Below the pieces are notes generated by a model. The model did no database searches. It saw only the letters and a list, made by a program, of their open reading frames with translations, and was not told the DNA's origin. DNA of 64,000 bases, from positions 177,415 through 241,414 of IMG/VR virus record IMGVR_UViG_3300009034_000001. One strand, written 5' to 3'. A program made the position numbers and the translations under genes. This document shows, piece by piece, positions 19,250 to 46,222 of the stretch; position 1 is the stretch's first letter; every line of letters starts with the position of its first letter.

Positions 19250-19582
19250 CTATCCAAAACAGACCTTCCTCATTAATGCTTTAAGTGCACATTTATTACC
19301 GCGTAACCTATAGTTCCAACCGGATAAAAACTTTCCTTTATGTACAATATTTAAACAACCATAACTATCAGAATCTGGTTGAGGCACAAGCTTCCAAAGT
19401 GGACAATTATTACAATACGGCCTAGTTCGCGGCGGCCACACACTAAAGTCTTTGTAAAATCCAGCATCGATACAAAGTTGGCAGGAATGGATGCCTCCAA
19501 AAATTACACTCTTTCTTTCTATGGTTGAACAAACAAGGTCAAATACTCTTTTTTGAGTCCAACGCTTCCTTTGGTTGAACAT
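19250..19582 (-). CDS. Family A paralog 1
   Basis: Likely start ATG 19582 with RBS; WT.KRV...CxxC...CxxCPLW...C...KG...GNK.ALKAL. Confidence 0.8.
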   Translation of the reverse strand: MFNQRKRWTQKRVFDLVCSTIERKSVIFGGIHSCQLCIDAGFYKDFSVWPPRTRPYCNNCPLWKLVPQPDSDSYGCLNIVHKGKFLSGWNYRLRGNKCALKALMRKVCFG

Positions 19583-20048
19583 ACCTACGATACCTCCTTC
19601 TTTCTTTTCGAAGTGGCACAATCTTTTTAGAGAAAACGTAACAACGATACATATGTCCAAGTACTCTGTGAGGAACGCGTTTAACACGCATCACAATACA
19701 AACGAGTTTGAGTAAATCGATGTCTTCATAATCGTAAACATCGATACTTGGATTCACTTGTTGGTGTCCGCTACATGAAAATAAAGTGCCACAGCCCTGT
19801 TCACGGGCTCGCATTACAACGTCCCTGATTCCCGGGTCAATTTTGTCGTCAATAGCTGACGTCCAATAACTACGATAGTGTTTACGCTCGTTGTCAGAAT
19901 ACCTTTGGCATATATGATAACAAAAAGTTAATGATTTCAGCCTGTCATTGTGCACAATTGTTATAATTCTACATCGTTTGACGTCAACTGGACGATAACA
20001 AATGAAACACTGGGGCTCAACATTAATTATAATTTGTTCGTCGTGCAC
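19539..20048 (-). CDS. Protein with ID..I..V...T..SCSGH motif (TYW3-like N-terminus; paralog of 56445-56939)
   Basis: IDPGIRDVVMRAREQGCGTLFSCSGH. Confidence 0.45.
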   Translation of the reverse strand: MHDEQIIINVEPQCFICYRPVDVKRCRIITIVHNDRLKSLTFCYHICQRYSDNERKHYRSYWTSAIDDKIDPGIRDVVMRAREQGCGTLFSCSGHQQVNPSIDVYDYEDIDLLKLVCIVMRVKRVPHRVLGHMYRCYVFSKKIVPLRKERRRYRRYVQPKEALDSKKSI

Positions 20049-20375
20049 ACTTTCACTTCCTTGACTGATATCATATCTTCTGCTAACATCTCAATACAAT
20101 TCCAAAAGGTACTCAATGAACCACTACCTGTGGTCACTTTGTAATTGACTTTAGGTTCCGTGCAACAAACCTCAAACTCCCAGCATTGTGCTGGATAGCC
20201 AGTAATCCATATCTTTACTCGAGCCCCGGGAAAGACAACTTCGCCAAGAAAGTGCTTTTCGTGACATTTAATATCAAAAGGTTTTAGTCCAAGTTTTTTC
20301 AAAAGACCTAAATCCCACGAAAAAGGTGTTACCCTATCTAAGCAGTCCAACATATAATATCCCTCCTCCTTTGTA

Positions 20376-21110
20376 CTAACAATTACTTGGAATCAAATCC
20401 GGAAACTCCAGCTCCAAGAACGCTTTAACTCTAATCTTTAATCTAAGTTCCAGTTGCCTTATCCTTTCCCTTGAAAGTCCAAATTTATCTCCAATTGCTT
20501 GCAGTGTTTTTGGCTTTTCAGACATTAAACGATTTTCTAAGATATACCGGTCTCTACTTTTCAATGTTCTACGAAATGTAGCAAACTGTTTATTGAAAAA
20601 CTTTCTCTCATCGCGTTCAACAATCTTCAGGTCAGTAGACTTTTCTTCATCTATTACAAGGCCGATTTGAGCTTGCCGATCCGAAACCTCGAGCGAGTCA
20701 AGAGATACATCCCACTTTACATCTTCATTAATATCCGGCTTGGAAGGCCTAACTATACTCCGATTGTTTGCAATGAACCTCAACATCTTAGACTTAATCC
20801 AGAAGGAAGCGTAGTAAGAAAATTTCACTCCTCTAAATGGGTCAAACTTCTCCACAGCACGAATTAAACCCAAATTACCTTCTTGAATCAAATCTAAAAC
20901 GTTGATGCCAAACCTGTTATAGTATCCCAAAGCAATTTTTACCACTAGCCTCAAATTTGAAATCACTAATTTGTCCCTTGCACTAAGGTCATTACTTTTT
21001 GCATACCTCTTTGCAAGTTCCAGAACCTTTTCTGACGGTAATACTGGATTATGTTTTATCTCTGATAAATACAGCTGAAATGTCCTATTATGTATAGTTT
21101 CTGTAAACAT
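20376..21110 (-). CDS. RNA polymerase sigma-70-family factor, RpoH-like
   Basis: Region 1.2 YLSEI; region 2 SNLRLVVKIA...DLIQEGNLGLIRAVEKFDPFRGVKFSYYASFWI; region 4 TLQAIGDKFGLSRERIRQLE. Confidence 0.92.
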   Translation of the reverse strand: MFTETIHNRTFQLYLSEIKHNPVLPSEKVLELAKRYAKSNDLSARDKLVISNLRLVVKIALGYYNRFGINVLDLIQEGNLGLIRAVEKFDPFRGVKFSYYASFWIKSKMLRFIANNRSIVRPSKPDINEDVKWDVSLDSLEVSDRQAQIGLVIDEEKSTDLKIVERDERKFFNKQFATFRRTLKSRDRYILENRLMSEKPKTLQAIGDKFGLSRERIRQLELRLKIRVKAFLELEFPDLIPSNC

Positions 21111-22433
21111 TACTTATTAGCCATACCGGAGAGTTCCGGAAAAGACGTTCTATAATCTATGCGCATAGCTTGATGTAAAAACCGCTCCAATAACCGAATA
21201 GCAGCCTTTGGATTTTCTTGAATAAGCAAACTAAGTCGGTGTGTTATTTCCCAACAGTTGTTGCAAAGTCTAGTAGCGTGCAGAGCTTTTGGAGAGCCGC
21301 ATTCCTTACAGTAAAACGCCATCCCCCTTGGTATTGTTATTGGTGCCATACACTAACCCCCATTATAAAAGTTAACGGCATTACTTTCTTCGCCGCTCTG
21401 ATAGAACACAAGGGCTTGTCTTCTTGGTCTAAACATTTCAACTCTCACCAAAAGCTCAGGTCTGTCTTTACTTGCCCTATAAGCCTCATCAAGACACTGA
21501 TGCAAACTGGTATAATAGTGCCCTTGGCCTATCTCTACATATTCCCATCGCCACTCCACCATTACTTTTCCTCCTCTATCCTTCAAAAATTGTTTCAAAC
21601 ACTTCCTCCCACGGAGTCATAATATCGATAGACTTTGGTGGCCAACCTTCATTTGAATATACATTCAACGTTACGGACTCTCGACCACAATGTAAGCCGA
21701 AAGTAACATCACCATAACGCTCTTTTAGCGCTCTCTTAAGTTCTTCAAGTTTTTCTCGAAGGAACCAATCCCACTTGTTCAAATTTGGTTTATCTCTCCA
21801 ACTCATTCTTTCCTCCTTCATTACATTCCTCTTCCTTGTGTCTCTTAAGTATCCTTCTGGATAAAACAAATATGCCTAAACTCACCACAATAGCTATATA
21901 ACATATATATGTTACCAAGTTACCTAAAAATGCAAATTCCGTATGTTGAGTCATATCTCAGTACCTCCTAAACAATATCCTCATCAAAGTATTCAAAGTT
22001 TTCAGGATCGGAGCCGTACAATGTTCTCTTTAACTTCGCCTTAGCACTACAACCTTTTTCATCACAACTAACATTGTACATAATCTCAAGATATACACGA
22101 TTGACTTTGACCCAAGCCCTTGCGGATATAAGACCATTTGTAGTCCAGCAATGATTACACTGTTTTTTCATGAGACTCTCCCTTTACTGGATTTCTTCAA
22201 TTCCTGGAAACTTATTCAACATACCCAAATTATAAGTCACAGGCTCCGATTTAATAAGAACATGCATCTTGTAGAGGCCGTGTGGAACATCTTCAAATAT
22301 AAATTCTAACAGCCCAATCAGAACAAGGCCATTCTTCAACCTAACACTTATGGTTTTATCTGTTGTAAATCTCTTTAACATAAAAAGCCTCCTCGTTCCG
22401 AATGAGTAAATGAAAATTTATTTTTAATAATAT

Positions 22434-22487
22434 AATATACATATGTACCTTAACGAACTTCAAGGGGGTCCTTAAAATTTTTTTGTG
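22434..22487 (-). promoter_or_regulatory. Repeated early promoter, copy 3
   Basis: AT-rich UP element, GGACC-N3-TTGAAG-N18-TATATT. Confidence 0.8.
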
Positions 22488-22497
22488 CCTGTTCCTT

Positions 22498-22863
22498 CTA
22501 TTTACCTAAACAGACTTTTCTAGCTAATGCCTTTAAAGCACCCTTATTCTTATATAACTTCTTTTCCCAATCGGCCAACGTCACACCTTTATAAACAGCG
22601 GAAGTACATAAGCTACCAGTAAGCGATTTAAACCGAGACTCTGGATAAATATTCCAAAGAGGGCACCAAAAACACTTACTAGGCTTCCATTCGACCATGC
22701 AAGTGAATAACGTATTTGAGTCCTTACAGAGTTTACAAGCCTCTCCAAAGGGATGGCTAAAAAACATTCCATTGTATGTAATATTTTTCAGTACAAGCTC
22801 GTAAACACGTTGCTTTGTCCATCTTTTTGACTTTTTGATATCCAAATTTACCACCCCCTCCAA
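22498..22863 (-). CDS. Family A paralog 2
   Basis: CKLC...CFWCPLW...C..AVYKG...NKGALKALARKVCLG. Confidence 0.85.
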   Translation of the reverse strand: MEGVVNLDIKKSKRWTKQRVYELVLKNITYNGMFFSHPFGEACKLCKDSNTLFTCMVEWKPSKCFWCPLWNIYPESRFKSLTGSLCTSAVYKGVTLADWEKKLYKNKGALKALARKVCLGK

Positions 22864-23067: not shown

Positions 23068-23385
23068 CTATCCTAGACAAACCTTTCTTGCTAACGCCCT
23101 TAATGCTCCACGATTTCCTTTAAGTCGATTCGTTATTTCACCTAGCCGTCTACCTTTATGTACATACAAACAACAAGCACTTTCAGAATCAGTATGAGGC
23201 AAATCAACAATATCCCTAAGTCGACAGTAGCCACAAAACTTCATAAACCTAAACGATTGAAAATCAGCTCGTTGTTTCGCGTCTATACAGAGCGGGCAGT
23301 CATTGGGAGCACTAAAGAATATACCGTACTTTTCAATATTGTTCAAAACAATCTTTAAGATATCCTCACGCGTATAACTACTCAT
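23068..23385 (-). CDS. Family A paralog 3
   Basis: NIEKYG...CPLC...CGYC...C..VHKG...GNRGALRALARKVCLG. Confidence 0.85.
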   Translation of the reverse strand: MSSYTREDILKIVLNNIEKYGIFFSAPNDCPLCIDAKQRADFQSFRFMKFCGYCRLRDIVDLPHTDSESACCLYVHKGRRLGEITNRLKGNRGALRALARKVCLG

Positions 23386-23640: not shown

Positions 23641-24011
23641 CTATCTTGGAATAAAGATTTCATTACATACAAATACACGCAATTTTCGTTGCCAGCCCTT
23701 TGCAATCACCTTTCGTATCTTTACTTTCTTTATTACGGGACTTCGCGGATACGGGAAATGGGAGTAGCCCAACTACGTGCGTCGCGTAAAGTATAAAAAC
23801 AATGCCAGCCATTTTTATACTCCTTTCCGAGCCAATCATGTAAAAATTGTTTGGGTTGTCCCACTGAAAAATCCTTAGCACGCAACCACTTACCTAAAGG
23901 TCGTGTCTTGCAACCGTAGAATTCGCCATACAAGCCATTAGCCGAGTCCACAAAGACTTTATAACCATACTTTGGTCGATACAAAGACGTGTCAAGTTGT
24001 CGAAGACACAT
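23641..24011 (-). pseudogene. Family B paralog 4, frameshifted near 23765
   Basis: Frame 1 ends at IREVP*; the family C-terminus (KKVKIRKVIAKGWQ...VFVCNEIFIPR*) continues in the -1 frame. Confidence 0.75.
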
Positions 24012-24022
24012 TTAACCACCCC

Positions 24023-24331
24023 CTAACCTAAAAAGACCTTCCTTGCTAATGCTCTAAGTGCTCCCTTTTTTCCTCTTAATTGTGAAGAGATATTGCGTAA
24101 TGACTTGTTTTTATGTTGTATCAAACAACAATCGGCATTCTCCGGCATTGGATACAGATCCCACAGCGGACAATAGTAACAGGCCCCCGACGGATAATTT
24201 AAAACTTCACCTCGACGTGAGTCTGCTTCATGACAAGCTTCGCATGTAGAAGAATCACCATATATGTCTCCAAAATTCTCGATGTTCTTTAAAGCAAGTT
24301 GAAAAACTCTTTTCTTTGTCCACTTTTTCAC
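24023..24331 (-). CDS. Family A paralog 4
   Basis: WTKKRV...CEAC...CYYCPLW...GALRALARKVFLG. Confidence 0.85.
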   Translation of the reverse strand: MKKWTKKRVFQLALKNIENFGDIYGDSSTCEACHEADSRRGEVLNYPSGACYYCPLWDLYPMPENADCCLIQHKNKSLRNISSQLRGKKGALRALARKVFLG

Positions 24332-25061: not shown

Positions 25062-25412
25062 CTAACCTAGACAGACTTTCCTTGCTAAAGCTCTAAGCGC
25101 CCCCTTGTTTTTGTTAAGGAACATTGACCACATTCCAAGACTTTTACCCTTGTACTTATAATTAGCACAGTAAAACTTACCACGTTGACTAACACTGGGA
25201 GGTCTAACAAGTTGCCAAATTGGACAATGGTCACATAGTGTAGTGCTTCCATACGTTCCGCTATTGTACCACAGATCTCTTGCATCATGACACAACTGAC
25301 AAGTGCGAACTAATCCAAAGAGTCCGCCTGTATCTTCAATATTTTGTAAAACTTGTTTATAAACTGCTTCACGCGGCCATTTCTCCATTATTAGCACCTC
25401 CTTTTCAATCAA
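25062..25412 (-). CDS. Family A paralog 5
   Basis: CQLC...CDHCPIW...C..YKYKG...NKGALRALARKVCLG. Confidence 0.85.
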   Translation of the reverse strand: MIEKEVLIMEKWPREAVYKQVLQNIEDTGGLFGLVRTCQLCHDARDLWYNSGTYGSTTLCDHCPIWQLVRPPSVSQRGKFYCANYKYKGKSLGMWSMFLNKNKGALRALARKVCLG

Positions 25413-28158: not shown

Positions 28159-28174
28159 TAATTAGTCACCTCCT

Positions 28175-28393: not shown

Positions 28394-28655
28394 AAGCTTC
28401 CCTCCTCACACAATGACTTTTTTAGAAATTATCTATAAGTTTTCTGATTGATGGATTCCGAATTTCAACCTCGTCAAGATTTTGGGGAAACAACAACACA
28501 GCAAATTGGTCTTCAAGGCTCATACCATCATAGCACACACGAATAAAACGTGCTCTCTCGTCACGACTTAATTTTCCAAACCAAGTAAAGAAACCCATGT
28601 TTTGTAGTTCACGTTCCATACTACCACCCTCCTATGACAGTTAAATAAGGAAAAA

Positions 28656-29006
28656 CTATTTCAATATTTTGACAGCTAACGCTCTAAGTGCGCCTTTATT
28701 GCCGTGTAACTTACTATCCAATTCAGTCAGACGTTTACCTTTATGTAAATAATTGACACATTGGTTAGAACTACCCTTCAACTCCAAAGGTTGTTTGAAA
28801 ATATTCCACAGAGGACACAAATCACAAACATCCTCGTCAATATCCAAGGTTAAATAACGTGTCCACCTTTCATCCTCCGCCTCGTGGCACATTTTACACG
28901 GAACACTATACATAGAGCCATAACTCTCGATGTTGCCAAATACCAATCTTAATACTCTACTTTTTGTAAACTTCGGCCTTCTCCTTCTGGGAAACATAAA
29001 CATCAC
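28656..29006 (-). CDS. Family A paralog 6
   Basis: NIESYGS...CKMC...CDLCPLW...C.NYLHKG...GNKGALRAL. Confidence 0.85.
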   Translation of the reverse strand: MMFMFPRRRRPKFTKSRVLRLVFGNIESYGSMYSVPCKMCHEAEDERWTRYLTLDIDEDVCDLCPLWNIFKQPLELKGSSNQCVNYLHKGKRLTELDSKLHGNKGALRALAVKILK

Positions 29007-29150
29007 CTCCTAAGTACTAATCATCAGGCGTAAAACCTTTACAGCCTTTACAGCCTTTACTGCTTGTACTGCTATCGCAAATCAAAAATGCTATAAACAT
29101 CACCAAACCAAAGAAAATTGAGAGTACAATTTCCATAACGTCGCCCCCAC

Positions 29151-29498
29151 TTAGCCCGACAATATTTTAGTAGCAACCGCTTTTAGTGCCCCTTTGTTAG
29201 GAAACAAAAGCTCATCCCAGGTGGATAACGATCTGCCTTTATATCGATATTCATAACATTGACCCTCAGTGCCTTTCAAATCCCTAGGTTGTGATAGTAC
29301 ATCCCATAACGGACAGTAATCACAATGACAAGAGTCTATTCCAAGAAGAGAGCCGGGTGGGTTATATATGTCGATATTGGGATAGCGCTTCGTTGATGCA
29401 CGGCACAATGCACAACCGCAGCCAAAAAAGGATTTATGTTGATCGATATTACGATACACTAACTGAAGTATTTTGTCCTTAGTCCACTTCCTTGGCAT
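29151..29498 (-). CDS. Family A paralog 7
   Basis: CALC...CDYCPLW...C..YRYKG...NKGALKAV. Confidence 0.85.
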   Translation of the reverse strand: MPRKWTKDKILQLVYRNIDQHKSFFGCGCALCRASTKRYPNIDIYNPPGSLLGIDSCHCDYCPLWDVLSQPRDLKGTEGQCYEYRYKGRSLSTWDELLFPNKGALKAVATKILSG

Positions 29499-29514
29499 TT
29501 AAACTTTCACCTCC

Positions 29515-29832
29515 TTAACTATCCTTCTTTGTTAAGTTGTTAACTAACGCAAGCAATAATGCTCGTAGTGCAGGTTTATTGTTACGTAATTTAGAATCCA
29601 AACTATGCAAGATTTTGCCTTTATATTTAATATTTGCGCAATCCGACATATATGGAATCGACTGTTTTAAATACCTCCAAAGTGGACAGACGTCACACTG
29701 GGAGTGGTCAAAACCAGCATGTTCCTCGGCTTCAACACAAAGTAGGCAAGTAAACGGATCTCCATATAAAGAGCCATCGCGTTCAATGTTACGCTCGACG
29801 CACCTTATAATAGATTTCTTCGATAGCTTCAT
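29515..29832 (-). CDS. Family A paralog 8
   Basis: KKSIIRCVERNIE...CLLC...CDVCPLW...C.NIKYKG...NKPALRALL. Confidence 0.85.
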   Translation of the reverse strand: MKLSKKSIIRCVERNIERDGSLYGDPFTCLLCVEAEEHAGFDHSQCDVCPLWRYLKQSIPYMSDCANIKYKGKILHSLDSKLRNNKPALRALLLALVNNLTKKDS

Positions 29833-29847
29833 TTTTTTTAGCCTCCT

Positions 29848-30171
29848 TTAGCTAAAGTGATTAATAAGTCCCCTTAACAACGCCAGTAACGCCGGCTTAT
29901 TTCCCCTTAGCTTTTTATTATGAACCCAAAGCGGGTTACCTTTATATCGTATAATAGAACAGCCGCTTTCAGCATCCGTACGACAGCCCAATTCCGGCAT
30001 TGTCACATAATCCCACAACGGACAGAAATTACACTTATAAGCAGAAAGATGTCCACGCCTGTTAAAAGCAATACTACAAAGTAAACAGTTAAAACGACTA
30101 AACAAAGAACCATGCATTTTAATGTTTCGCTCGACGAAATTTATAAGGTTTTCCTTTGAAATCTTATGCAT
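29848..30171 (-). CDS. Family A paralog 9
   Basis: CLLC...CNFCPLW...C..IRYKG...GNKPALLALL. Confidence 0.85.
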   Translation of the reverse strand: MHKISKENLINFVERNIKMHGSLFSRFNCLLCSIAFNRRGHLSAYKCNFCPLWDYVTMPELGCRTDAESGCSIIRYKGNPLWVHNKKLRGNKPALLALLRGLINHFS

Positions 30172-30588: not shown

Positions 30589-31017
30589 TTATTTAACTGT
30601 ATCTGCAACCTGTTTCTCTATAAAAATCTGTTTACATACAGTAACACTATGACTTTCCATGCCACTAAATGTGCTGAAACATTGATTCCCAACACAAACT
30701 GGTTCTTTTACCCTTACCCTCCAAATCTCGTGATTATGGTCGTATCCAAAACGTCCTTTCTGTTTTAGTCGAGCCTTTACATCCTTCAAACTATGGTAAA
30801 CATGAAAACCTCGAAGATAACACGTACGACCTTCATCTCTTAAGGATATTGTTTCCTTACGAAAATTACCAATGTAATCTTTTTCATGTAACCATTGGTG
30901 TCTAGGCCTAACTTTACTTCTGTTTATAAATTCGCCATAAAGTTTACCGTTTATCCGAGCAAAAACCTTATAACCTTGCTTCACTGGCCGTTTATTTGTC
31001 ACTACAGATAAACACAT
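30589..31017 (-). CDS. Family B paralog 5
   Basis: MCLS...GYKVF...GKLYGE...RP..WLHEKDY...GFHVYH...VTVCKQIFI. Confidence 0.85.
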   Translation of the reverse strand: MCLSVVTNKRPVKQGYKVFARINGKLYGEFINRSKVRPRHQWLHEKDYIGNFRKETISLRDEGRTCYLRGFHVYHSLKDVKARLKQKGRFGYDHNHEIWRVRVKEPVCVGNQCFSTFSGMESHSVTVCKQIFIEKQVADTVK

Positions 31018-31050
31018 TTAATGCCCTCCTTTAACTGTGCCTATTACAAG

Positions 31051-31494
31051 CTACTTCTTATATACAGGAATTCGTTCTTCTATAAAAATCTGCTTACAAA
31101 CCGTAACATTTTGCCTCACCATTTCACCACCCATATGAAGGCGATAGTTTTGAACCCCATTACAAGTAGGCTCTTTTATCTTAACCTTCCATATTTCGTA
31201 ACTACCTCTACGCGCTTCGTAGGGGTAAGTCATTTTCCGACGAAGTCGAGCCTTGGCATCCTTCAAACTATGGTATACATGAAAACCCATAAGGTACTTA
31301 TGAAAACCTCTATCTCTTAAGAACATTATATCCTCCCAATAGCTATCTCTGTAGTCTTTTTCATGTAACCACCGGCGTTTTGGTCTAACCTGTTCGTTAC
31401 TTACATATTCTCCATACAGTTTGCCATGAAGCTGAAAGAAGATCTTGTAACCTTGTTTCACCGATCTTCTATTTATTACGGTTGATAAACACAT
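31051..31494 (-). CDS. Family B paralog 6 (tandem duplicate of paralog 5)
   Basis: Same motifs; identical 26-nt RBS/start junction at about 31008-31032 and 31484-31509. Confidence 0.85.
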   Translation of the reverse strand: MCLSTVINRRSVKQGYKIFFQLHGKLYGEYVSNEQVRPKRRWLHEKDYRDSYWEDIMFLRDRGFHKYLMGFHVYHSLKDAKARLRRKMTYPYEARRGSYEIWKVKIKEPTCNGVQNYRLHMGGEMVRQNVTVCKQIFIEERIPVYKK

Positions 31495-34410: not shown

Positions 34411-34734
34411 TTATTTCTTGGCCCCCTTCGAATAGAAATTTATTAAACCTCTTAAAAACGCTCGTAGCGCAGGTTTATTTCCTTCCAACCTACTTTCAAT
34501 AGTAAACACAGCTTCTCCCTTGTATTTCAGGTGGCTACAAGCGGCTTCCAAACCGCAAAACTTTGGTTTTGGTAAATAATCCCATAATGGACAGTACTTA
34601 CATGTAAAATATTCCGTGGGAGACGTTCTCTTGTCAGCCTCAATACAAAGTTTACAGCTATGTAAACCTCCACTGAATGAGCCATATTTCTCGATGTTAT
34701 TTTTTATAAACTGAATAATTGTTGACTTCTTCAT
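34411..34734 (-). CDS. Family A paralog 10
   Basis: Family motifs; first of a 7-gene tandem array. Confidence 0.9.
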   Translation of the reverse strand: MKKSTIIQFIKNNIEKYGSFSGGLHSCKLCIEADKRTSPTEYFTCKYCPLWDYLPKPKFCGLEAACSHLKYKGEAVFTIESRLEGNKPALRAFLRGLINFYSKGAKK

Positions 34735-35063
34735 TTATGTCTTCCTCCTTTATTTTTATACTCGTTGATGAGTCCATTTAACATTGCACGTAGTGCAGGT
34801 TTATTTCCTGTCAACCTGGAATCCAACACAACCAACTTTTCTCCTTTATATTTAAGATTAAAACATTCGGCCCCATAATGTTCAAACTCTGGTTTTGGCG
34901 CGTAATCCCATAGTGGACAAACTTGACATACATCACGGACATCACGAAACAGCAACTTCGCTTCAGCTTCTCTACAAAATATGCAACCACGACGACCGCC
35001 CCAAAGGGAACCACTTTTCTCTATATTACCTCTTAAAAACCGAATAATGGTTGACTTCCTCAT
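34731..35063 (-). CDS. Family A paralog 11
   Basis: Family motifs. Confidence 0.9.
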   Translation of the reverse strand: MRKSTIIRFLRGNIEKSGSLWGGRRGCIFCREAEAKLLFRDVRDVCQVCPLWDYAPKPEFEHYGAECFNLKYKGEKLVVLDSRLTGNKPALRAMLNGLINEYKNKGGRHK

Positions 35064-35067
35064 TTAT

Positions 35068-35382
35068 TTAATCCTCCTTGTCAAAATGTTTAATTAGTCC
35101 ATTTAATAAAGCTCGAAGTGCCGGTTTGTTTCCTTCCAACCTCATTTCAATCTCAAACAACGCTTTTCCATTATACTTAAGATTTGCACAGCTAGCTTGA
35201 TAACTACGACACTTTGGTTTTGGTATATAATCCCATAGTGGACAGACCTTGCATGCAAGCCAATCCGGTGGGGACATCCTCTTTTGAGCCTCGGCACAAA
35301 GTTTACAGTTAGATAAATTACAAAATGAGCCATATTTCTCAATATTATTTTTTACAAACCGAATAATGGTTGACTTTCTCAT
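35068..35382 (-). CDS. Family A paralog 12
   Basis: Family motifs. Confidence 0.9.
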   Translation of the reverse strand: MRKSTIIRFVKNNIEKYGSFCNLSNCKLCAEAQKRMSPPDWLACKVCPLWDYIPKPKCRSYQASCANLKYNGKALFEIEMRLEGNKPALRALLNGLIKHFDKED

Positions 35383-35386
35383 TTAT

Positions 35387-35719
35387 TTAATCCTCCTTGT
35401 CAAAATGCTTAATTAGTCCATTTAATAAAGCTCGAAGTGCCGGTTTGTTTCCACGCAACTTGAAATCAATCGTATTCAATGTTTCCCCTTTATAACTAAT
35501 CCACCCACAGCTATATTCATTAGTTGGTATGTAATCCCACAGAGGACAAGCAACACACCTACACCTGCCATAATGGTAGGTATTATTAGGATCAAACCTT
35601 TTATCAGCCTCCCAACAAAGCATGCATCCACAGCTCAATTCAAATGCTTTCCTGCAGAATAACGAGCCATACCTCTCAATATTATTCTTAACAAATCGAA
35701 TAATGGTTGACTTCCTCAT
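35387..35719 (-). CDS. Family A paralog 13
   Basis: Family motifs. Confidence 0.9.
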   Translation of the reverse strand: MRKSTIIRFVKNNIERYGSLFCRKAFELSCGCMLCWEADKRFDPNNTYHYGRCRCVACPLWDYIPTNEYSCGWISYKGETLNTIDFKLRGNKPALRALLNGLIKHFDKED

Positions 35720-35723
35720 TTAT

Positions 35724-36035
35724 TTAATCCTCCTTGCCAAAGTGATTAACTAACCCATTTAACAATGCTCGAAGTGCTGGTTTGTTTCCAGCCAACTTGT
35801 TTTCCCAAACTAGTAACGGTTCTCCTTTATAACTAATCCACCCGCAGGCAGGCGTAATATCACACTTTGGTTTTGATATGAAATCCCATAGTGAACAAAC
35901 TTCACAGATATTACAAAACGCGGGCTTCCTCAATTTAGCTTCTGCGCAAAGTATACAATCACTCAATCCACCAAAGAGGGAACCACGACTTTCGATGTTT
36001 CCTTTTACATACCGAATAATTGTTGCCTCCTTCAT
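35724..36035 (-). CDS. Family A paralog 14
   Basis: Family motifs. Confidence 0.9.
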   Translation of the reverse strand: MKEATIIRYVKGNIESRGSLFGGLSDCILCAEAKLRKPAFCNICEVCSLWDFISKPKCDITPACGWISYKGEPLLVWENKLAGNKPALRALLNGLVNHFGKED

Positions 36036-36352
36036 TATTTTCTCCCTTTACTAGCCAAATTGACCAATCCATTCAACACCGCGCGTAATGCTGGTTTGTT
36101 TCCTTCCAATCTCATATCCAACACGCACAATCTTTCGCCTTTGTATTTAATCTTGCCACATGGGGATTCAAAACCTTCATACTTTGGTTTTGGAAAATAA
36201 TCCCATAATGAACATGCATCACAGGAATTCCAAAATAAAGCTTTCCGCTTTTTTGCTTCGTTACAAAGTACGCAACCAACTGTGCCACCGAAGAGAGAGC
36301 CATAACTCTCGATGTTTTCTTTCACACATAGAATAATTGTTGATTTTTTCAT
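36035..36352 (-). CDS. Family A paralog 15
   Basis: Family motifs. Confidence 0.9.
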   Translation of the reverse strand: MKKSTIILCVKENIESYGSLFGGTVGCVLCNEAKKRKALFWNSCDACSLWDYFPKPKYEGFESPCGKIKYKGERLCVLDMRLEGNKPALRAVLNGLVNLASKGRK

Positions 36353-36684
36353 CTACTAAGTCCTCCTTTATTAAACGAGTTGACAACCCCATTTAACAAC
36401 GCACGCAGTGCGGGTTTGTTTCCTTTGAGAGTGTCACTCCAATAAGCTAGCCTCATCCCTTTATACAATATATCCTCGCAGTAAGGACTTATATTACCTA
36501 TCAAAACAGGGTCACTTATATAATCCCACAGGGGACAGAAACTGCACTTTGGTGTCAGTCCCGAGGTTTTTGCACGGCGCGCTGAAGCTACCAAACAAAT
36601 TTTACAAATAGACGCGAGCCCGTATAAAGAGCCATGTGTATTGATGTTTTTCTCAACACACCTTATAATTGATTTCAGGTTCAT
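36349..36684 (-). CDS. Family A paralog 16
   Basis: Family motifs. Confidence 0.9.
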   Translation of the reverse strand: MNLKSIIRCVEKNINTHGSLYGLASICKICLVASARRAKTSGLTPKCSFCPLWDYISDPVLIGNISPYCEDILYKGMRLAYWSDTLKGNKPALRALLNGVVNSFNKGGLSR

Positions 36685-40146: not shown

Positions 40147-40455
40147 CTAACCAAAGTAATTATCTAATCCCTTTAGTAGTGCTCGTAGTGCTGGTCTATT
40201 TCCAGCTAGCCTAGAGTTCAAGACATGAAGATTCTTACCTTTGTATTTAATCTGATCACATCCACAAATATACGTTGGCCACTCTGGTCGAGGCATGTGG
40301 TCCCACAGGGGACACCACGCACAACTTGAGCCACAACTTGTGCCTTTCCTAGCCATGGCAACATCACACAATGCACAATCGAGCGGATGCCCATACAAAG
40401 AGCCATGGTTCGAGATGTTATTCCTTAAAAAACGAATAATCGCTGTCTTATTCAT
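40147..40455 (-). CDS. Family A paralog 17
   Basis: Family motifs; first of a 5-gene tandem array. Confidence 0.9.
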   Translation of the reverse strand: MNKTAIIRFLRNNISNHGSLYGHPLDCALCDVAMARKGTSCGSSCAWCPLWDHMPRPEWPTYICGCDQIKYKGKNLHVLNSRLAGNRPALRALLKGLDNYFG

Positions 40456-40781
40456 TTCTTTATTTCCTCCTTACCAAAACGCGTAATTAATCCATTCAAG
40501 AGTGCACGTAGTGCTGGTCTATTTCCAACTAGAATACAATCAATCGCCAACAAAGACCTTCCCTTATATACAATCCCAGAGCAGCTATAATTACTAGTAG
40601 GTATGTAATCCCACAACGGACAATCCATACAAGTTCCCTCATAGACATCAGGGTCAAAGTCGGGGTTAAACCGCTTATCGGCCTCTTTACAAATCACACA
40701 ACCCGCCATTTCCTTACTGAACAACGAGCCATACTCTTCAATATTCCTCTTGACACATCTTATAATGGTTGTCTTCTTCAT
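40452..40781 (-). CDS. Family A paralog 18
   Basis: Family motifs. Confidence 0.9.
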   Translation of the reverse strand: MKKTTIIRCVKRNIEEYGSLFSKEMAGCVICKEADKRFNPDFDPDVYEGTCMDCPLWDYIPTSNYSCSGIVYKGRSLLAIDCILVGNRPALRALLNGLITRFGKEEIKK

Positions 40782-41098
40782 CTTTTTATTTCCTCCTTGC
40801 CAAAGTAATTAACTAATCCATTTAGCAGCGCTCGTAGTGCTGGTTTGTTTCCACGCAATCTATGCTCAAATTTGTACAGAGTTGTTCCTTTATGCCAAAT
40901 ATCTGCACAATCGGCTCTGTGACCCGGTGGTTTTGGCATGATATCCCATAATTGACAGTTATTACATTCAGATGTACCCAGTGAAGTTTTCCGCTTTTCT
41001 GCTTCCTTACACAAAACACAATTAAACGGGTCGCCATATAAAGAGCCATACGTCTCAATATTACGTTTTACAAGGCTAATAATAACTGACTTCTTCAT
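40778..41098 (-). CDS. Family A paralog 19
   Basis: Family motifs. Confidence 0.9.
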   Translation of the reverse strand: MKKSVIISLVKRNIETYGSLYGDPFNCVLCKEAEKRKTSLGTSECNNCQLWDIMPKPPGHRADCADIWHKGTTLYKFEHRLRGNKPALRALLNGLVNYFGKEEIKR

Positions 41099-41424
41099 TT
41101 ATTAAGTCCTCCTTTTTCAAACAAGTTGATAACCCCATTTAACAATGCTCGTAGTGCTGGTTTGTTTCCTTCCAGCTCGGAATCAATCGAAATCAACGGT
41201 TTCCCTTTATACCTAATCCACCCACAGCTATTATCACTAGTAGATATGTAATCCCACAGAGGACAAGCAACACACCTACACCTGCCATAATGGTGGGAAT
41301 TATTAGGGTTAAATCTTTTACCTGCCACATCACAAAGTGCACAGGTTGTAAGTTTATCACTAAATAACGAGCCATACTTCTCGATATTCCTCTTGACACA
41401 TCTTATAATGACTGACTTCTTCAT
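41095..41424 (-). CDS. Family A paralog 20
   Basis: Family motifs. Confidence 0.9.
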   Translation of the reverse strand: MKKSVIIRCVKRNIEKYGSLFSDKLTTCALCDVAGKRFNPNNSHHYGRCRCVACPLWDYISTSDNSCGWIRYKGKPLISIDSELEGNKPALRALLNGVINLFEKGGLNK

Positions 41425-41759
41425 TTGTTTAATTCTCCTTTATTAAAAGCGTTGATAAGTCCATTTAATAACGCTCGAAGAGCTGGTTTATTGCCATTCA
41501 AGAAGTAATCAGAAGCAAAAAGTTTTGCTCCTTTGTAGAGAATGTCAGAACATTCTGAATACCTACCAGATGGTCTTGTTATGTGATTCCACAATGGACA
41601 GAGGTCACATTCAAGTACCATTTCGAAAACCTTCCAATCCGTTTGAGAAGCACGCTTTTGTGCTCCCTTACAAAGAATGCAATCATCTGGAATTCCGTAT
41701 AACGACCCATACTTCTCAATATTCCTTTTGATGCATCTTATAATAGCTGAAACCTTCAT
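41421..41759 (-). CDS. Family A paralog 21
   Basis: Family motifs. Confidence 0.9.
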   Translation of the reverse strand: MKVSAIIRCIKRNIEKYGSLYGIPDDCILCKGAQKRASQTDWKVFEMVLECDLCPLWNHITRPSGRYSECSDILYKGAKLFASDYFLNGNKPALRALLNGLINAFNKGELNK

Positions 41760-42287: not shown

Positions 42288-42341
42288 AATATACCAATTT
42301 TTAGGTTTAACTTCAAGGGGGACCCTAAAATATTTTTGTAC
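42288..42341 (-). promoter_or_regulatory. Repeated early promoter, copy 4
   Basis: GTACAAAAATATTTTAG-GGTCC-N3-TTGAAG-N17-TATATT. Confidence 0.85.
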
Positions 42342-42484
42342 TGTGTTGATATGTCATCCCTTGTTAACCTTTTGGCCAAGTTGCTATCAGTAAAGTGACC
42401 ATTGCAGCCCAAAACAACAATCTCCATCCCCACTTGCCCATCATAACCTCCTATTGAGTAATATACTCTTTCAAATCAACAAAT

Positions 42485-42805
42485 TTACCGGGGGTCACCC
42501 GATACCGAAACTTTCATCCAAACTTCGCCGTTGAAGAGGTCAGAAACAAAATGTCTACCATTGCATTTATTATCAAGATAACATTCAGTAGTCTTCCCGT
42601 CAGAACCCGAAGCCAGAAAGATGTCACTACACATGGTAAATTCTTCCTTGAAGACTTTGTTGCCTCTCCCCCCAGGAACAATATAACGTCTAACCGCAAA
42701 ATCCTTTTTTAGCTTGTGCCTCTCATCATAGAGAACTCTAATCCAACGATTGAATTTAAAATGTTCTCTTTCGTACCTTTCCTTTAATGTAGATTGATCA
42801 CACAT
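42485..42805 (-). CDS. Family C paralog 1
   Basis: MCD..TLKERY...W.RV..DERHKLK...VRRY...F....DIFL...KTTECY...FVSDLFNGEVW. Confidence 0.88.
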   Translation of the reverse strand: MCDQSTLKERYEREHFKFNRWIRVLYDERHKLKKDFAVRRYIVPGGRGNKVFKEEFTMCSDIFLASGSDGKTTECYLDNKCNGRHFVSDLFNGEVWMKVSVSGDPR

Positions 42806-42849
42806 CTTTTGTGTCCTCCTTCTAAATAAGTTTAATCAAACCAAATTAT

Positions 42850-43176
42850 TTAACAATCTGCATCCTCACAAATCCAAACTTCGCCATTAAAGAGAAGACT
42901 AACAAAACCGGTCCGACATGTCATAACGGCATCATGATACAAATAATGCTCGGTTGTCTTCCCGGCGCTCTCAGTCAGAAAAATATCCGAATCCATCCAA
43001 AATTGGTACAAACTGACTTTGTCATTCCCCACGGGAGGGATAACATAACGCCTAACAAACACGCCAGTTTTTAGTTTGTGCCTCTCATCGTAAGGGACTC
43101 TAATCCAACGAGGAACGCATTTATCTTTAATCTGTTCCCTTTCATACCTTTCCTTTAATGTAGATTGATCGCACAT
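42850..43176 (-). CDS. Family C paralog 2
   Basis: Family motifs. Confidence 0.88.
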   Translation of the reverse strand: MCDQSTLKERYEREQIKDKCVPRWIRVPYDERHKLKTGVFVRRYVIPPVGNDKVSLYQFWMDSDIFLTESAGKTTEHYLYHDAVMTCRTGFVSLLFNGEVWICEDADC

Positions 43177-43206
43177 CTTTTGTATCCTCCCTCTAAATAA
43201 GTTTAA

Positions 43207-43548
43207 TCAAACCTGAGACCAAATACGCATCCAAACTTCGCCACGGAAGAGGTCTCCAACATAACCCCTTTTTCCAATCGATGCTTGTCCAGGCAAAATT
43301 TCATCATGGTACATATAAGCAGTTGTTGTCCTCCCGTTGTAACCCTTTGTAAGAAAAATGTCAGAATCCATCCAAAAGTCATGTACTTCAACATGGTCAC
43401 TCCCAGTAGGGACAAAATAGCGCCTAACCCTAGTACCCGATTTTAGCTTGTGTCGCTCATCAAAGGGAACCAGAACCCAACTAGGAACGCATTTATCTTT
43501 ATTCTGTTCCCTTTCATGTCTTTCCTTTAATGAAAGTTTAATACACAT
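43207..43548 (-). CDS. Family C paralog 3
   Basis: Family motifs. Confidence 0.88.
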   Translation of the reverse strand: MCIKLSLKERHEREQNKDKCVPSWVLVPFDERHKLKSGTRVRRYFVPTGSDHVEVHDFWMDSDIFLTKGYNGRTTTAYMYHDEILPGQASIGKRGYVGDLFRGEVWMRIWSQV

Positions 43549-43592
43549 CGTTTATACCTCCTTTCGGTGGTTAATAAAACCAAGTTATTTAT

Positions 43593-43997
43593 TCAGCAAC
43601 CCGTGAGCACCAAAATCCAAACTTCATCCATAAACAGATCCTGAACAAAACCACTCCGTCCCCCTATATTTTTCGAGTCCTTAACAAAACCCTTCCGTTC
43701 CCCCATCTTACTCGAGGGTACTGGCCCAGGCGGAGGATGATACAAATAACACTCCGTAGTCTTCCCGTTGTAACCCTCCGTCAGAAAAATGTCCGAATCA
43801 AGCCAAAATTCTTGCATGGAGACTTTGCCACTATTTCCCACCTTAACGTAGCGCCTAACAAACATACCAGCTTTTAGCTGGTGTCTCCGTTCAAAGGGAA
43901 CCATAATCCAACGAGGAACGCACGTTTTCTGTTGCTTTTCATATCTTTCCTTTAATGTAACTTTAAAAAAATCAGTAGCTGCTGGAAAATCGAACAT
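43593..43997 (-). CDS. Family C paralog 4 (with Pro/Gly-rich insertion)
   Basis: Family motifs plus HPPPGPVPSSKMGERKG insert. Confidence 0.88.
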   Translation of the reverse strand: MFDFPAATDFFKVTLKERYEKQQKTCVPRWIMVPFERRHQLKAGMFVRRYVKVGNSGKVSMQEFWLDSDIFLTEGYNGKTTECYLYHPPPGPVPSSKMGERKGFVKDSKNIGGRSGFVQDLFMDEVWILVLTGC

Positions 43998-44711: not shown

Positions 44712-44945
44712 TTACGTTACAATAAGTCCAAATACGACCGCAATGCTCGCTCCGAACCATGTGCACCACAAATCGTCCCACTCAGGCGTTCCATAACCTA
44801 ACATATCTAACAATTCCTTTGCCACGCCAAATGCGAATCCGGCAAAATAAAGTGGCGACCATGCCATTCCTAACAAAGATAGCATACAACCCACTATAAG
44901 ATGCGCTATTTTATCTCTTCTCAATGTAATATCCCAATGACCCAT
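44712..44945 (-). CDS. Small membrane protein (VanZ/DUF2279-like DK..H...KE..D motif)
   Basis: DKIAH...hydrophobic helices...KELLD..G.G...DL. Confidence 0.5.
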   Translation of the reverse strand: MGHWDITLRRDKIAHLIVGCMLSLLGMAWSPLYFAGFAFGVAKELLDMLGYGTPEWDDLWCTWFGASIAVVFGLIVT

Positions 44946-45028
44946 ATAAAATCCCCCATATTTTTTTTGCCCGTCCCAAATTAAATAATACAGTTAAAGA
45001 TATGTCGTTTACCTCCTTTTCGTACTCC

Positions 45029-45174
45029 GAGGGAATCAAACCCTCATCCGCTATTGTCATACTAGGGCTCACGGCTACTAGAAACATCATGAGTCATTAC
45101 ACGACACAGCACAATGTTACCGTGAGCCCGGCACCCCCTCGATCTCCGCCTTTCCGCAGATGCCGCAAGGCGGA
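45029..45174 (-). ncRNA. Candidate structured RNA element
   Basis: GC-rich intergenic stretch with three stems: TCCGCCTT/AAGGCGGA, GGGCTCACGG/CCGTGAGCCC and GAGGG-TTTGATT-CCCTC. Confidence 0.35.
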
Positions 45175-45244
45175 AGCCTACTCAAACACAGATATAGCTG
45201 ACACGGCCAGTCCAAATTCAAACACCTCCATATAAACCGCACTG

Positions 45245-45562
45245 CTACTCGTACACGTACATCATCCATACTTCGCAGTTAAAGAGGTCACTAACATAAT
45301 ACTTGGTGACATCACCTTTTCGGTTATAACATTCTTCAGTTACCGAGTTATAGTTTGGAGCCAAATAGATGTCAGTACCCATAGTAAATTCTTTCATATA
45401 GACACAAGTACTTCCTGCTGTAAGGATAAAAGCTCTGACTACCTTATCCTTCTTCAATACATGTCTTTGGTCATAAGGCACATGACACCAACGGTCATAG
45501 TGTGGTACCTGCTCTCTGAGCCATCGATCTCTTAAACATGGTTTATCATCCATTTCTTTCAC
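45245..45562 (-). CDS. Family C paralog 5
   Basis: Family motifs (FTMGTDIYL, YVSDLFNCEVW). Confidence 0.88.
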   Translation of the reverse strand: MKEMDDKPCLRDRWLREQVPHYDRWCHVPYDQRHVLKKDKVVRAFILTAGSTCVYMKEFTMGTDIYLAPNYNSVTEECYNRKGDVTKYYVSDLFNCEVWMMYVYE

Positions 45563-45586
45563 CTCTTTTAAATATACTCCGTACTG

Positions 45587-45892
45587 TTACGCGTACATCC
45601 GCCATACCTCTCCGTTAAAAAGGTCACTAACAAAATATTCGATATCACAACCTCTTTTCTTATAACATTCCGTAGTTAACTTGGAAAAGCCTCCTGACGA
45701 TAAATAGATGTCAGTACCCATAGTAAATTCTTCCATGTGAACACAATCTCTTCCAAATGGAACGGCATAACATCTAATCCTAATGCCCTTCTTTAATAAA
45801 TGTCTCTGGTCGTGACGCACTTGAGTCCAATAACAATCGACAGGTGACTGTTCCTTCATGTATCTATCTCTTAAAGTAGGTTCGCCGCACAA
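45587..45892 (-). CDS. Family C paralog 6
   Basis: Family motifs. Confidence 0.88.
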   Translation of the reverse strand: MCGEPTLRDRYMKEQSPVDCYWTQVRHDQRHLLKKGIRIRCYAVPFGRDCVHMEEFTMGTDIYLSSGGFSKLTTECYKKRGCDIEYFVSDLFNGEVWRMYA

Positions 45893-45916
45893 TTTCTTTC
45901 ACCTCCTTTATTCTCA

Positions 45917-46222
45917 CTAAATATCTTTACTTTTTATCCACACCTCTCCGTTAAACAGATCACTAACAAAGCGTACGTCACTGTAGCCGTATTCCCTATA
46001 GTATTGAATGGTTTTTAAGTTAGTGCCCTTTCCCAAATAGATATCTGTGGCCATAGTGAATTCTTCCACGATGACTTCTTGAGTTCCAATTGGTATAATG
46101 TAACGCCTTACCCTAGTGCCACTCTTTAATAAATGTCTTTTGTTATAGGGTACACATTTCCAGTTGTCATTATCGTATGTCTCCCTGAGATGCCGATCCC
46201 TTAAACAAGGTTTGTCACACAT
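45917..46222 (-). CDS. Family C paralog 7
   Basis: Family motifs. Confidence 0.88.
   Translation of the reverse strand: MCDKPCLRDRHLRETYDNDNWKCVPYNKRHLLKSGTRVRRYIIPIGTQEVIVEEFTMATDIYLGKGTNLKTIQYYREYGYSDVRFVSDLFNGEVWIKSKDI

What the first reader, a model, noticed from the sequence alone, without database searches (positions are those of the whole stretch)
19250..46222. Shared expansion mechanism: near-identical junction DNA flanking variable gene cores in three unrelated families
Seen: family A junction 35041-35133 vs 35360-35452 (93 nt, 2 mismatches) while the adjacent cores differ widely. Family C junction about 42773-42842 vs 43145-43213 is nearly identical, including intergenic DNA. Family B has an identical 26-nt RBS/start junction before both 31017 and 31494. 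The arrays thus have a repeat-like junction and spacer-like core with about 320-bp period. Inference: a gene-accordion driven by unequal recombination at conserved junctions.
Basis: partly seen in the sequence, partly recalled or inferred. Interest (0 to 1): 0.7.

Follow-up and report, generated by a model that had tools for sequence, protein, structure and literature searches.

The report
Old tandem gene families, patchy recombination
The accessory arm of an uncultivated 241-kb phage carries three unrelated families of small tandemly duplicated genes that are old and diverged, with a few short recombined patches between copies but no sign of a currently expanding or contracting "accordion".

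Summary
The three cited near-identical junction pairs exist: A is 93 nt with 2 mismatches, C is 70 nt with 4 mismatches (second copy 1 nt off), and B is 26 nt identical. Each is one pair per family, not a property of the arrays.

The window is the last 64 kb of a 241,415-bp sediment-metagenome tailed phage. All genes lie on the minus strand.
- **Family A:** 21 paralogs of about 105 aa with five invariant Cys, found nowhere else in 5.8 billion proteins.
- **Family C:** 7 paralogs.
- **Family B:** 6 paralogs.
- The three are mutually unrelated.

The copies are old: 31-66% amino-acid identity and synonymous sites near saturation. In family A the repeat-like junction mostly reflects conserved N- and C-terminal helices, plus the next gene's ribosome-binding site inside the upstream gene's tail. 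Codon identity at conserved residues is uniform along the gene. Family C has no general junction conservation.

Recombination among family A paralogs is nevertheless real. A PHI test is significant, local dS falls to 0.08 against 1.35 nearby, and gene 35387-35719 is a clear mosaic. The phage encodes a RecA-like recombinase.

No copy-number variation was seen, but the test was weak. Verdict: an ordinary diversified multigene family with sporadic gene conversion. Function is unknown.

The parts
34411..36684 (-). Family A array 2. Seven head-to-tail genes of 103-111 aa: 34411-34734, 34731-35063, 35068-35382, 35387-35719, 35724-36035, 36035-36352 and 36349-36684. They overlap by 4 nt (ATGA) or are 4 nt apart.
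   Evidence: ORFs, paralogy, spacing of 316-337 bp.
40147..41759 (-). Family A array 3. Five genes: 40147-40455, 40452-40781, 40778-41098, 41095-41424 and 41421-41759. All overlap by 4 nt.
28656..30171 (-). Family A array 1. Four genes: 28656-29006, 29151-29498, 29515-29832 and 29848-30171. The first two belong to the older GNKGALRAL subfamily and the last two to the GNKPALRAL subfamily.
   Evidence: tree.
19250..19582 (-). Dispersed family A member of the GNKGALKAL/ARKVC subfamily. The likely start is the ATG at 19582, inside the longer ORF that runs to 19687.
22498..22863 (-). Dispersed family A member.
23068..23385 (-). Dispersed family A member.
24023..24331 (-). Dispersed family A member. 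It lies directly upstream of family B member 23733-24011.
25062..25412 (-). Dispersed family A member.
35041..35133 (-). Near-identical tract, copy 1. It holds the last 22 codons of gene 35068-35382, a 4-nt spacer and the first 23 nt of gene 34731-35063.
   Evidence: 93 nt with 2 mismatches against 35360-35452. Local dS is 0.08 against 1.35 in the core of the same gene pair.
35360..35452 (-). Near-identical tract, copy 2. It holds the C-terminal 22 codons of gene 35387-35719, the spacer and the start of gene 35068-35382.
35397..35620 (-). Core of mosaic gene 35387-35719, shared with 41114-41337 in array 3. The two are 82% identical and include a 50-nt exact match, 35528-35577 = 41245-41294.
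   Evidence: Family D4, painting, exact matches. The conversion-type run has global p = 0.009. The tree groups this gene with 40452 and 41095 at 97/96 support.
41114..41337 (-). Partner core tract, in gene 41095-41424.
42485..43997 (-). Family C array 1. Four genes: 42485-42805, 42850-43176, 43207-43548 and 43593-43997, with 30-44 nt spacers.
45245..46222 (-). Family C array 2. Three genes: 45245-45562, 45587-45892 and 45917-46222.
42755..42842 (-). Family C junction tract, copy 1. It covers the 5' end of gene 42485-42805 plus the upstream spacer, and is 92% identical to 43126-43213.
   Evidence: Family D18. 36 of 40 upstream nt are identical, against 12-20 of 40 in all other C pairs.
43126..43213 (-). 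Family C junction tract, copy 2. It covers the 5' end of gene 42850-43176, the spacer and the last codons of gene 43207-43548.
30589..31494 (-). Family B tandem pair, 30589-31017 and 31051-31494, 53% amino-acid identity. The 26 nt around each start are identical (31007-31032 = 31484-31509).
23733..24011 (-). Family B member, short form of 92 aa.

Best explanation
The region is part of the accessory arm of a novel uncultivated tailed phage of 241 kb. The arm consists of small genes, all on one strand. Three lineage-specific small-protein families (A with 21 copies, C with 7, B with 6) arose by repeated single-gene tandem duplication, and some copies later dispersed. These duplications happened long ago.

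The copies have since diverged to 31-66% protein identity, with synonymous sites close to saturation. They are kept as tightly packed arrays that look translationally coupled.

In family A the repeat-like junction is mainly the DNA image of three overlapping constraints:
- a conserved C-terminal helix (GNKPALRALLNGL);
- the Shine-Dalgarno site of the next gene, encoded inside the upstream gene's tail;
- a conserved N-terminal helix.

On this old background lie a few short tracts of near-identity, about 26-230 nt long. These are footprints of later homologous exchange between paralogs, by interlocus gene conversion or unequal crossover. The exchanges occurred both between neighbours and between arrays 5.7 kb apart, and they produce mosaic genes. 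The conserved ends supply most of the exact-match substrate. The phage's own RecA/UvsX-type recombinase is a plausible catalyst.

What is shown: the paralogy, the age of the copies, the mosaicism and the recombination signal.

What is inferred:
- Duplication by unequal recombination and the identity of the recombinase.
- That family A proteins are small zinc- or disulfide-stabilised helical proteins, based on five invariant Cys in CxxC...CxxCPLW...C. Their variable core would give a repertoire of host-interaction specificities, such as takeover or anti-defence.
For: Families and copy numbers:
- 21 family A matches lie in the phage genome, all inside the window. All-against-all clustering gives A 21, C 7 and B 6.
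- The families are unrelated to each other.

Age:
- Family A amino-acid identity to the reference copy is 31-66%.
- Median synonymous difference is 0.60 in the N-terminus, 0.74 in the core and 0.65 in the C-terminus.
- Median terminal branch length is 1.16 substitutions per site.

Constraint rather than homogenisation:
- Codon identity at identical residues is 0.557, 0.544 and 0.538 for N-terminus, core and C-terminus. Amino-acid identity is 0.64, 0.40 and 0.70.
- An AAGGAGG site sits in the last codons of the upstream gene for nearly every array member.
- Family C shows no end conservation except in one pair.

Recombination:
- PHI gives z about -8.7, and z = -3.9 with p<0.0005 under codon-block permutation.
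- dS is heterogeneous within pairs. Pair 35068/35387 has 0.08 in the C-terminus and 1.35 in the core. Pair 40452/41095 has 0.21 in the N-terminus and 2.0 in the core. Pair 35387/41095 has 0.46 in the core and 1.9 in the C-terminus.
- The mosaic painting shows the pattern directly.
- The longest concordant run for 35387/41095 has global p = 0.009.
- Arrays are not monophyletic.
- 34 of 48 exact matches of 14 nt or more lie in the ends.
- A RecA-family gene lies at genome 105221-106351 and scores 119 bits.

Reality of the arrays:
- Duplicate contigs of the source metagenome are identical apart from 2 mismatches.
- Unitigs from two other sediment runs match at 100% and bridge three junctions in the reference configuration.
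Against: - No relatives carrying family A exist in the searched collections. Neither the duplication history nor copy-number stability can be checked against orthologues.
- Normalised for codon bias, synonymous similarity is slightly higher at the ends than in the core. The excess over saturation is 0.15-0.18 against 0.12. Some diffuse homogenisation of the ends is therefore not excluded.
- The second-best conversion tract is only borderline after global correction, at p = 0.068. That test stops at the gene end, whereas the tract continues across the junction.
- PHI on very divergent sequences can be inflated by rate heterogeneity. The codon-block control reduces this risk but does not remove it.
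- Function is pure inference. There is no Pfam or PHROG hit and no fold match.
Confidence: 0.62

Rival explanations
1. This is the reader's model: a live gene accordion. The arrays currently expand and contract by unequal homologous recombination at conserved junctions. The cores behave as exchangeable cassettes, and all three families share this mechanism.
For: - Each family has one junction-centred near-identical tract.
- Exact-match substrate is concentrated in the family A ends.
- There is recombination signal, and the core of 35387-35719 looks like a cassette swapped between conserved flanks.
- The phage encodes a RecA-like recombinase.
Against: - Copies are old and diverged, with no near-identical whole units.
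- Synonymous divergence is almost uniform along the gene.
- Only one pair per family shows the junction tract. Family C has no general junction similarity.
- The longest exact match lies in a core, not a junction.
- Copy number and junctions are identical in the duplicate contigs and in two independent sediment runs, with no alternative joints. Depth there was only 2-4, so this is weak.
Confidence: 0.15
2. Pure duplication and divergence with no later exchange. On this view the near-identical tracts are only the most constrained coding and regulatory segments, or remnants of the most recent duplications.
For: - End conservation tracks amino-acid conservation and the embedded Shine-Dalgarno sites.
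- The family B tract is just a Shine-Dalgarno site, a spacer and the conserved M-C-L-S start.
Against: - dS differs more than tenfold between segments of the same gene pair.
- Gene 35387-35719 has different closest relatives in its ends and in its core.
- PHI is significant even with codon-block permutation.
- The family C tract includes non-coding DNA at 36 of 40 identical, against 12-20 of 40 in other pairs.
Confidence: 0.15
3. Junctions are mobile regulatory cassettes of the PeSL type, as in T4-type phages. They would be promoter-terminator units that mediate modular shuffling of unrelated ORFs.
For: The setting is similar: a hyperplastic region of small orphan genes in a large phage, with repeated short junction sequences (PMC2839356).
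Against: - Family A genes overlap or are 4 nt apart, so there is no intergenic cassette.
- Promoter-like sites are not enriched, at 43 against 50.4 expected. Terminator-like sites are barely enriched, at 17 against 11.1 plus or minus 3.5.
- The units flanked are homologous paralogs, not unrelated ORFs.
Confidence: 0.03

Closest known systems
Gene accordions: the poxvirus K3L amplification (Elde et al. 2012, from my own knowledge) and the Staphylococcus aureus csa1 lipoprotein cluster (PMC7360770)
   Same: Tandem arrays of paralogs in a large dsDNA genome. Recombination between copies is the proposed driver. The setting is a host-interaction locus.
   Different: Known accordions are defined by observed copy-number change within populations and by near-identical or recently amplified units. 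Here the units are 31-66% identical at protein level, synonymous sites are near saturation, and no copy-number variant was seen.
Interlocus gene conversion in tandem multigene families (a general phenomenon, for example PMC3966223 and PMC2720389, listed)
   Same: Short tracts of high identity lie in otherwise diverged paralogs. dS is heterogeneous along the genes. Closest relatives form a mosaic. Tracts sit preferentially where similarity is highest.
   Different: It is seen here in an uncultivated phage and in an orphan protein family. Homogenisation is sporadic, and there is no concerted evolution of whole units.
Terminal multigene families of large eukaryotic DNA viruses, such as the small Cys-rich MGF110 family of African swine fever virus and terminal families of poxviruses (from my own knowledge, not tested here)
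   Same: Many diverged small paralogs are clustered in one arm of a linear genome, near its end. They are presumed to be host-interaction repertoires.
   Different: The virus realm and the proteins are different. There is no sequence or fold relationship. Gain and loss between isolates is documented there and cannot be tested here.
PeSL-mediated modular shuffling in T4-type phages (PMC2839356 and PMC4122927)
   Same: Short repeated sequences between small non-essential genes of a large phage serve as recombination sites.
   Different: PeSLs are intergenic units of a promoter plus a stem-loop terminator, and they flank unrelated ORFs. Here the repeats are the coding ends of homologous genes, and no promoter or terminator signal was found.

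Membership tests
Gene accordion (poxvirus K3L or S. aureus csa1 type) | Head-to-tail tandem array of homologous units | tested here: met
   Family A arrays hold 4, 7 and 5 genes. Family C arrays hold 4 and 3. Family B has a pair.
Gene accordion (poxvirus K3L or S. aureus csa1 type) | Units are near-identical or recently amplified | tested here: not met
   Amino-acid identity is 31-66%. Median synonymous difference is 0.67 overall. Only short tracts are near-identical.
Gene accordion (poxvirus K3L or S. aureus csa1 type) | Copy number varies within a population or between close relatives | tested here: inconclusive
   Duplicate contigs of the same metagenome and unitigs from two later sediment runs show the reference junctions only. 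Depth was 2-4, there were no long reads, and no relatives exist.
Multigene family with interlocus gene conversion | Statistical signal of recombination among paralogs | tested here: met
   PHI gives z = -8.7, and z = -3.9 with p<0.0005 under codon-block permutation. The concordant run for 35387/41095 has global p = 0.009.
Multigene family with interlocus gene conversion | Segments of one gene have different closest paralogs, and dS is heterogeneous within pairs | tested here: met
   Painting. dS is 0.08 against 1.35, 0.21 against 2.0, and 0.46 against 1.9.
PeSL regulatory cassettes of T4-type phages | Intergenic unit of a sigma-70-like promoter plus a stem-loop terminator | tested here: not met
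   Family A has no intergenic space. Promoter-like sites number 43 against 50.4 expected, and terminator-like sites 17 against 11.1.
Diversity-generating retroelement | A reverse transcriptase gene in the genome | tested here: not met
   PF00078 has no match in the 241-kb genome.
   Units are 316-477 bp and fully coding. The so-called spacers are homologous protein cores.

The most novel reading that the evidence does not exclude
Family A is a phage-encoded combinatorial repertoire. A conserved helical scaffold with five invariant Cys would display a variable core. Gene conversion would shuffle these cores between 21 expressed copies, through the conserved ends. The phage would thereby hold a standing library of binders against variable host targets, such as defence systems or sigma and RNA polymerase variants. 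That would be a recombination-based counterpart, in a phage, of antigenic-variation cassette systems.
Probability: 0.12. Interest if true: 0.65.

Novelty: new member of a known kind. Interest (0 to 1): 0.3.

Why it matters
This is a clean example, in an uncultivated jumbo phage, of how accessory-gene repertoires grow. Single-gene tandem duplication was followed by deep divergence and occasional short-tract exchange, which builds mosaic genes.

A 21-copy orphan family takes up about 3% of the genome. It has no homologue among billions of proteins and no known fold, so it is a reasonable target for functional work. It sits in the same arm as a phage sigma factor.

It does not open a new mechanism. 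Multigene families, gene conversion and conserved termini with variable cores are all well known. The accordion idea, which was the more exciting part, has no support here.

Tried and rejected
1. **Relatives for a copy-number comparison.**
   - Family A was sought in GenBank phages by megablast and tblastn, in IMG/VR and in 5.8 billion proteins. Only the phage's own genes were found.
   - A DNA polymerase search in IMG/VR found a 173-kb record from the same metagenome. It is the same genome, covering 1245-174352 at 99.998% identity and lacking the arm.
   - Two further contigs of that metagenome cover window 25239-38571 and 38589-51424. They differ by 2 and 0 mismatches and have no indels. They are duplicate assemblies, not independent strains.
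2. **Public runs.** Two 2024 sediment runs hold the phage at word depth 2-4, as unitigs of 150-700 bp. All matching pieces are identical, and three junctions are bridged in the reference form with no joints. The loose ends at family A are cross-mapping of other paralogs, and the remaining ones are unrelated contigs. This gives no usable information on copy-number heterogeneity.
3. **Function.**
   - Pfam and PHROGs gave nothing above noise for A, B or C.
   - The family A model (pLDDT 83) has no fold match in PDB, AFDB clusters, BFVD or the ESM Atlas. The all-against-all VIA search gave a best Z of 3.7.
   - Faint hits to Erv1, the ASFV sulfhydryl oxidase and Ero1 (Z 2.7-2.9, HMM E 0.4) were judged noise.
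   - A zinc-binding anti-sigma role was considered because a sigma factor lies at 20376-21110. Pfam gave no anti-sigma hit, so the idea has no support.
   - The family C model (pLDDT 85) is a small beta-barrel with only generic SH3-like or chromo-barrel-like matches, at E 0.02-0.3.
   - ESM Atlas features say only 'viral hypothetical'.
4. **Positive selection.** Pairwise dN/dS in family A cores is 0.2-0.7 and never above 1. Saturation limits this test.
5. **Other mechanisms.** A diversity-generating retroelement was excluded because there is no reverse transcriptase. PeSL-type cassettes were rejected. A CRISPR-like array was rejected because the units are coding.
6. **Assembly artefact.** Rejected. 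Units differ by 25-50%, and independent data reproduce the junctions.
7. **Literature.** No paper was found on the source sample or on comparable jumbo-phage tandem families.

Full report
**Context**

The window is bases 177,415-241,414 of a single 241,415-bp virus record. It comes from a JGI sediment metagenome (sample 3300009034, contig Ga0115863_1000006) and has a CheckV completeness of 98%.
- GC content is 0.40.
- Every ORF of 150 aa or more that is not a shadow of another lies on the minus strand, and GC skew is strong throughout.
- The genome encodes a caudovirus prohead protease, a family A DNA polymerase fused to a UDG domain, and a glycosyltransferase. It also encodes a RecA-family recombinase and three tRNAs.
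- Inside the window are a sigma-70 family factor at 20376-21110 and an isochorismatase-family protein at 61342-61983.
- The polymerase is at most 28% identical to anything in GenBank phages, so this is a deeply novel tailed phage.
- The sigma factor and the strong AGGAGG ribosome-binding sites point to a bacterial host.
- The last 64 kb is an arm of small genes with almost no database matches.

**Checking the observation**

The three cited pairs are real.
- Family A: 35041-35133 and 35360-35452 differ at 2 of 93 positions.
- Family B: 31007-31032 and 31484-31509 are identical over 26 nt.

The families are also real.
- A genome search with one family A protein finds 21 copies, all between window 19250 and 41759.
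- All-against-all clustering gives A 21, C 7 and B 6.
- Profile comparisons show that the three families are unrelated.
- Unit spacing is 316-337 bp in A, 336-431 bp in C and 477 bp in B.

**Is a near-identical junction a property of the arrays?**

It is not.
- In family A the junction segment of the other copies is 63-87% identical to the reference copy.
- In family C all pairs except the first two copies share only 12-20 of the 40 bases upstream of the start. Protein identity is flat along the length, at 0.47, 0.46 and 0.44.
- In family B the identical 26 nt consist of a Shine-Dalgarno site, seven spacer bases, and ATG plus the M-C-L-S codons. The M-C-L start is shared by all six members, including dispersed ones whose upstream DNA is unrelated.

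Each family therefore shows one patch, not an architecture.

**Why family A ends look conserved**

The protein alignment has three conserved elements:
- an N-terminal helix, approximately MKKSTIIRxVKxNIExYGS;
- five invariant Cys, arranged CxxC...CxxCPLW...C;
- a C-terminal helix, GNKPALRALLNGL.

Nucleotide identity per codon column follows that protein pattern. The decisive control is codon identity at positions where the two proteins carry the same residue.
- It is 0.557 in the N-terminal part, 0.544 in the core and 0.538 in the C-terminal part.
- The values expected at saturation from the genome's codon usage are 0.36-0.43.
- Median synonymous differences are 0.60, 0.74 and 0.65, close to saturation everywhere.

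The tail of each upstream gene also encodes the AAGGAGG site of the next gene. Genes overlap by ATGA or lie 4 nt apart. The repeat-like junction is therefore mostly two conserved helices plus a translational-coupling signal laid end to end. The copies are old, with a median terminal branch of 1.16 substitutions per site.

**Recombination is nevertheless present**

- A pairwise homoplasy (PHI) test on the 12 closest members gives z of about -8.7. It remains significant when whole codons are permuted and within-codon pairs are excluded, at z = -3.9 with p<0.0005.
- dS varies more than tenfold inside single gene pairs.

| Gene pair | Low-dS segment | High-dS segment |
|---|---|---|
| 35068 / 35387 | C-terminus 0.08 | core 1.35 |
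| 40452 / 41095 | N-terminus 0.21 | core 2.0 |
| 35387 / 41095 | core 0.46 | C-terminus 1.9 |

- Window-by-window painting shows that gene 35387-35719 is a mosaic. Its first 50 nt or so and its last 70 nt or so match its neighbour 35068-35382 at 91-100%. Its core matches 41095-41424, 5.7 kb away in another array, at 80-100%. That core includes a 50-nt exact match.
- A permutation test on runs of concordant polymorphic sites gives global p = 0.009 for that core tract and 0.068 for the C-terminal tract. The second test stops at the gene end, although the tract continues across the junction.
- The protein tree puts 35387 with 40452 and 41095 at 97/96 support, and the arrays are not monophyletic.
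- Exact matches of 14 nt or more between units fall mostly in the ends: 34 of 48, and 9 of the 12 that are 20 nt or longer. The ends make up 42% of a unit.

**Copy-number dynamics**

No genome other than this one carries family A.
- The same metagenome contains further contigs of the same phage: 173 kb, 13.3 kb and 25.4 kb.
- They are 99.985-100% identical to the main contig and have no indels across any array.
- They are duplicate assemblies and do not count as independent evidence.

Two sediment runs released in 2024 hold the phage at very low depth.
- Their unitigs are identical to the window and bridge junctions at 40778-40781, 41421-41424 and 42805-42850 in the reference form.
- No alternative joint appears.
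- The loose ends near family A are reads of other paralogs.

This speaks weakly against rapid flux and cannot exclude rare variants.

**What the proteins are**

- **Family A** has no Pfam or PHROG match. Its confident all-helical model (pLDDT 83) matches no known fold. Five invariant cysteines suggest a zinc site or disulfides.
- **Family C** models as a small beta-barrel with only generic matches. It has two distant relatives in 1.8 billion representatives. One of them is a single-copy gene in the small-gene region of a T4-like myovirus.
- **Family B** has the invariant residues M1, C2, L3, K17, F19, L26, P38, W42, Y67, G70 and H72. About 16 homologues are scattered in metagenomes, and none carries a functional annotation.

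Pairwise dN/dS in family A cores is 0.2-0.7. That is relaxed relative to the ends but not above 1.

**Verdict**

The cited pairs are confirmed, but the generalisation is not. Homologous exchange among paralogs occurs and uses the conserved ends, but the arrays are old, diversified multigene families and not a demonstrable accordion. The three families share a genomic neighbourhood and a mode of origin, not a special junction element. This is a new member of a known kind of system. Interest is modest, and rests mainly on the size and complete orphan status of family A.

Noticed in passing
window 20376-21110 (-): A sigma-70 family factor, with regions 2 and 4 at E 1e-16 and 3e-8. It sits among the dispersed family A members. 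It indicates a bacterial host and phage-directed transcription.
   Followed up: partly
window 61342-61983 (-): An isochorismatase-family protein (E 6e-44). It is one of very few annotatable genes in the 64-kb arm.
   Followed up: no
whole genome G000:C1:1-241415: All substantial ORFs across 241 kb lie on one strand, with a strong constant GC skew of -0.15 to -0.39 on the plus strand. No end repeats are recorded, so the replication and packaging strategy is unknown.
   Followed up: no
G000:C1:72500-74250 and 92500-95600 (outside the window): Two large structural-region genes contain long internal tandem repeats. Units of about 130-160 bp are 75-83% identical, seen as ladders of off-diagonal BLAST hits.
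   Followed up: no
window 25239, 38571-38589 and genome position 174352: The source metagenome holds a second, nearly identical set of contigs for this phage, of 173 kb, 13.3 kb and 25.4 kb. Their ends fall at these points, one of them inside family A gene 25062-25412. Why the assembler split a duplicate path there is unexplained. The only differences in the 13.3-kb piece are at window 31921 and 34387.
   Followed up: partly
window 36349-36684 (-) and 36641-36877 (+): The metagenome's gene caller missed this complete family A member and called an opposite-strand ORF instead.
   Followed up: yes
window 34527-34685, 34811-35014, 35142-35342, 36112-36303, 40822-41058 (-): A five-member 'family' of 52-78 aa ORFs lies in another frame inside family A genes. 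It is a by-product of the repeated DNA and very probably not real genes.
   Followed up: yes
window 5064-5474, 7378-7764, 10133-10555, 23733-24011, 30589-31017, 31051-31494 and the family C genes: All family B proteins start M-C-L and most family C proteins start M-C. Family B also has an invariant G-x-H. A Cys at position 2 recalls N-terminal-nucleophile enzymes, but no family or fold match supports this.
   Followed up: partly
window 12689-13429, 53589-53930, 57678-58148, 58274-58726, 60371-60926, 62214-62438 and 62993-63208: The arm holds further small paralog families beyond A, B and C, including a 5-member family, a tandem pair and a 3-member family. Duplication is therefore a general habit of this arm.
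   Followed up: no
window 42821-42842 vs 43192-43213: The spacer upstream of family C gene 42485-42805 carries a copy of the last codons and stop of gene 43207-43548. This is a relic showing that the duplicated or converted unit crossed a gene boundary.
   Followed up: partly
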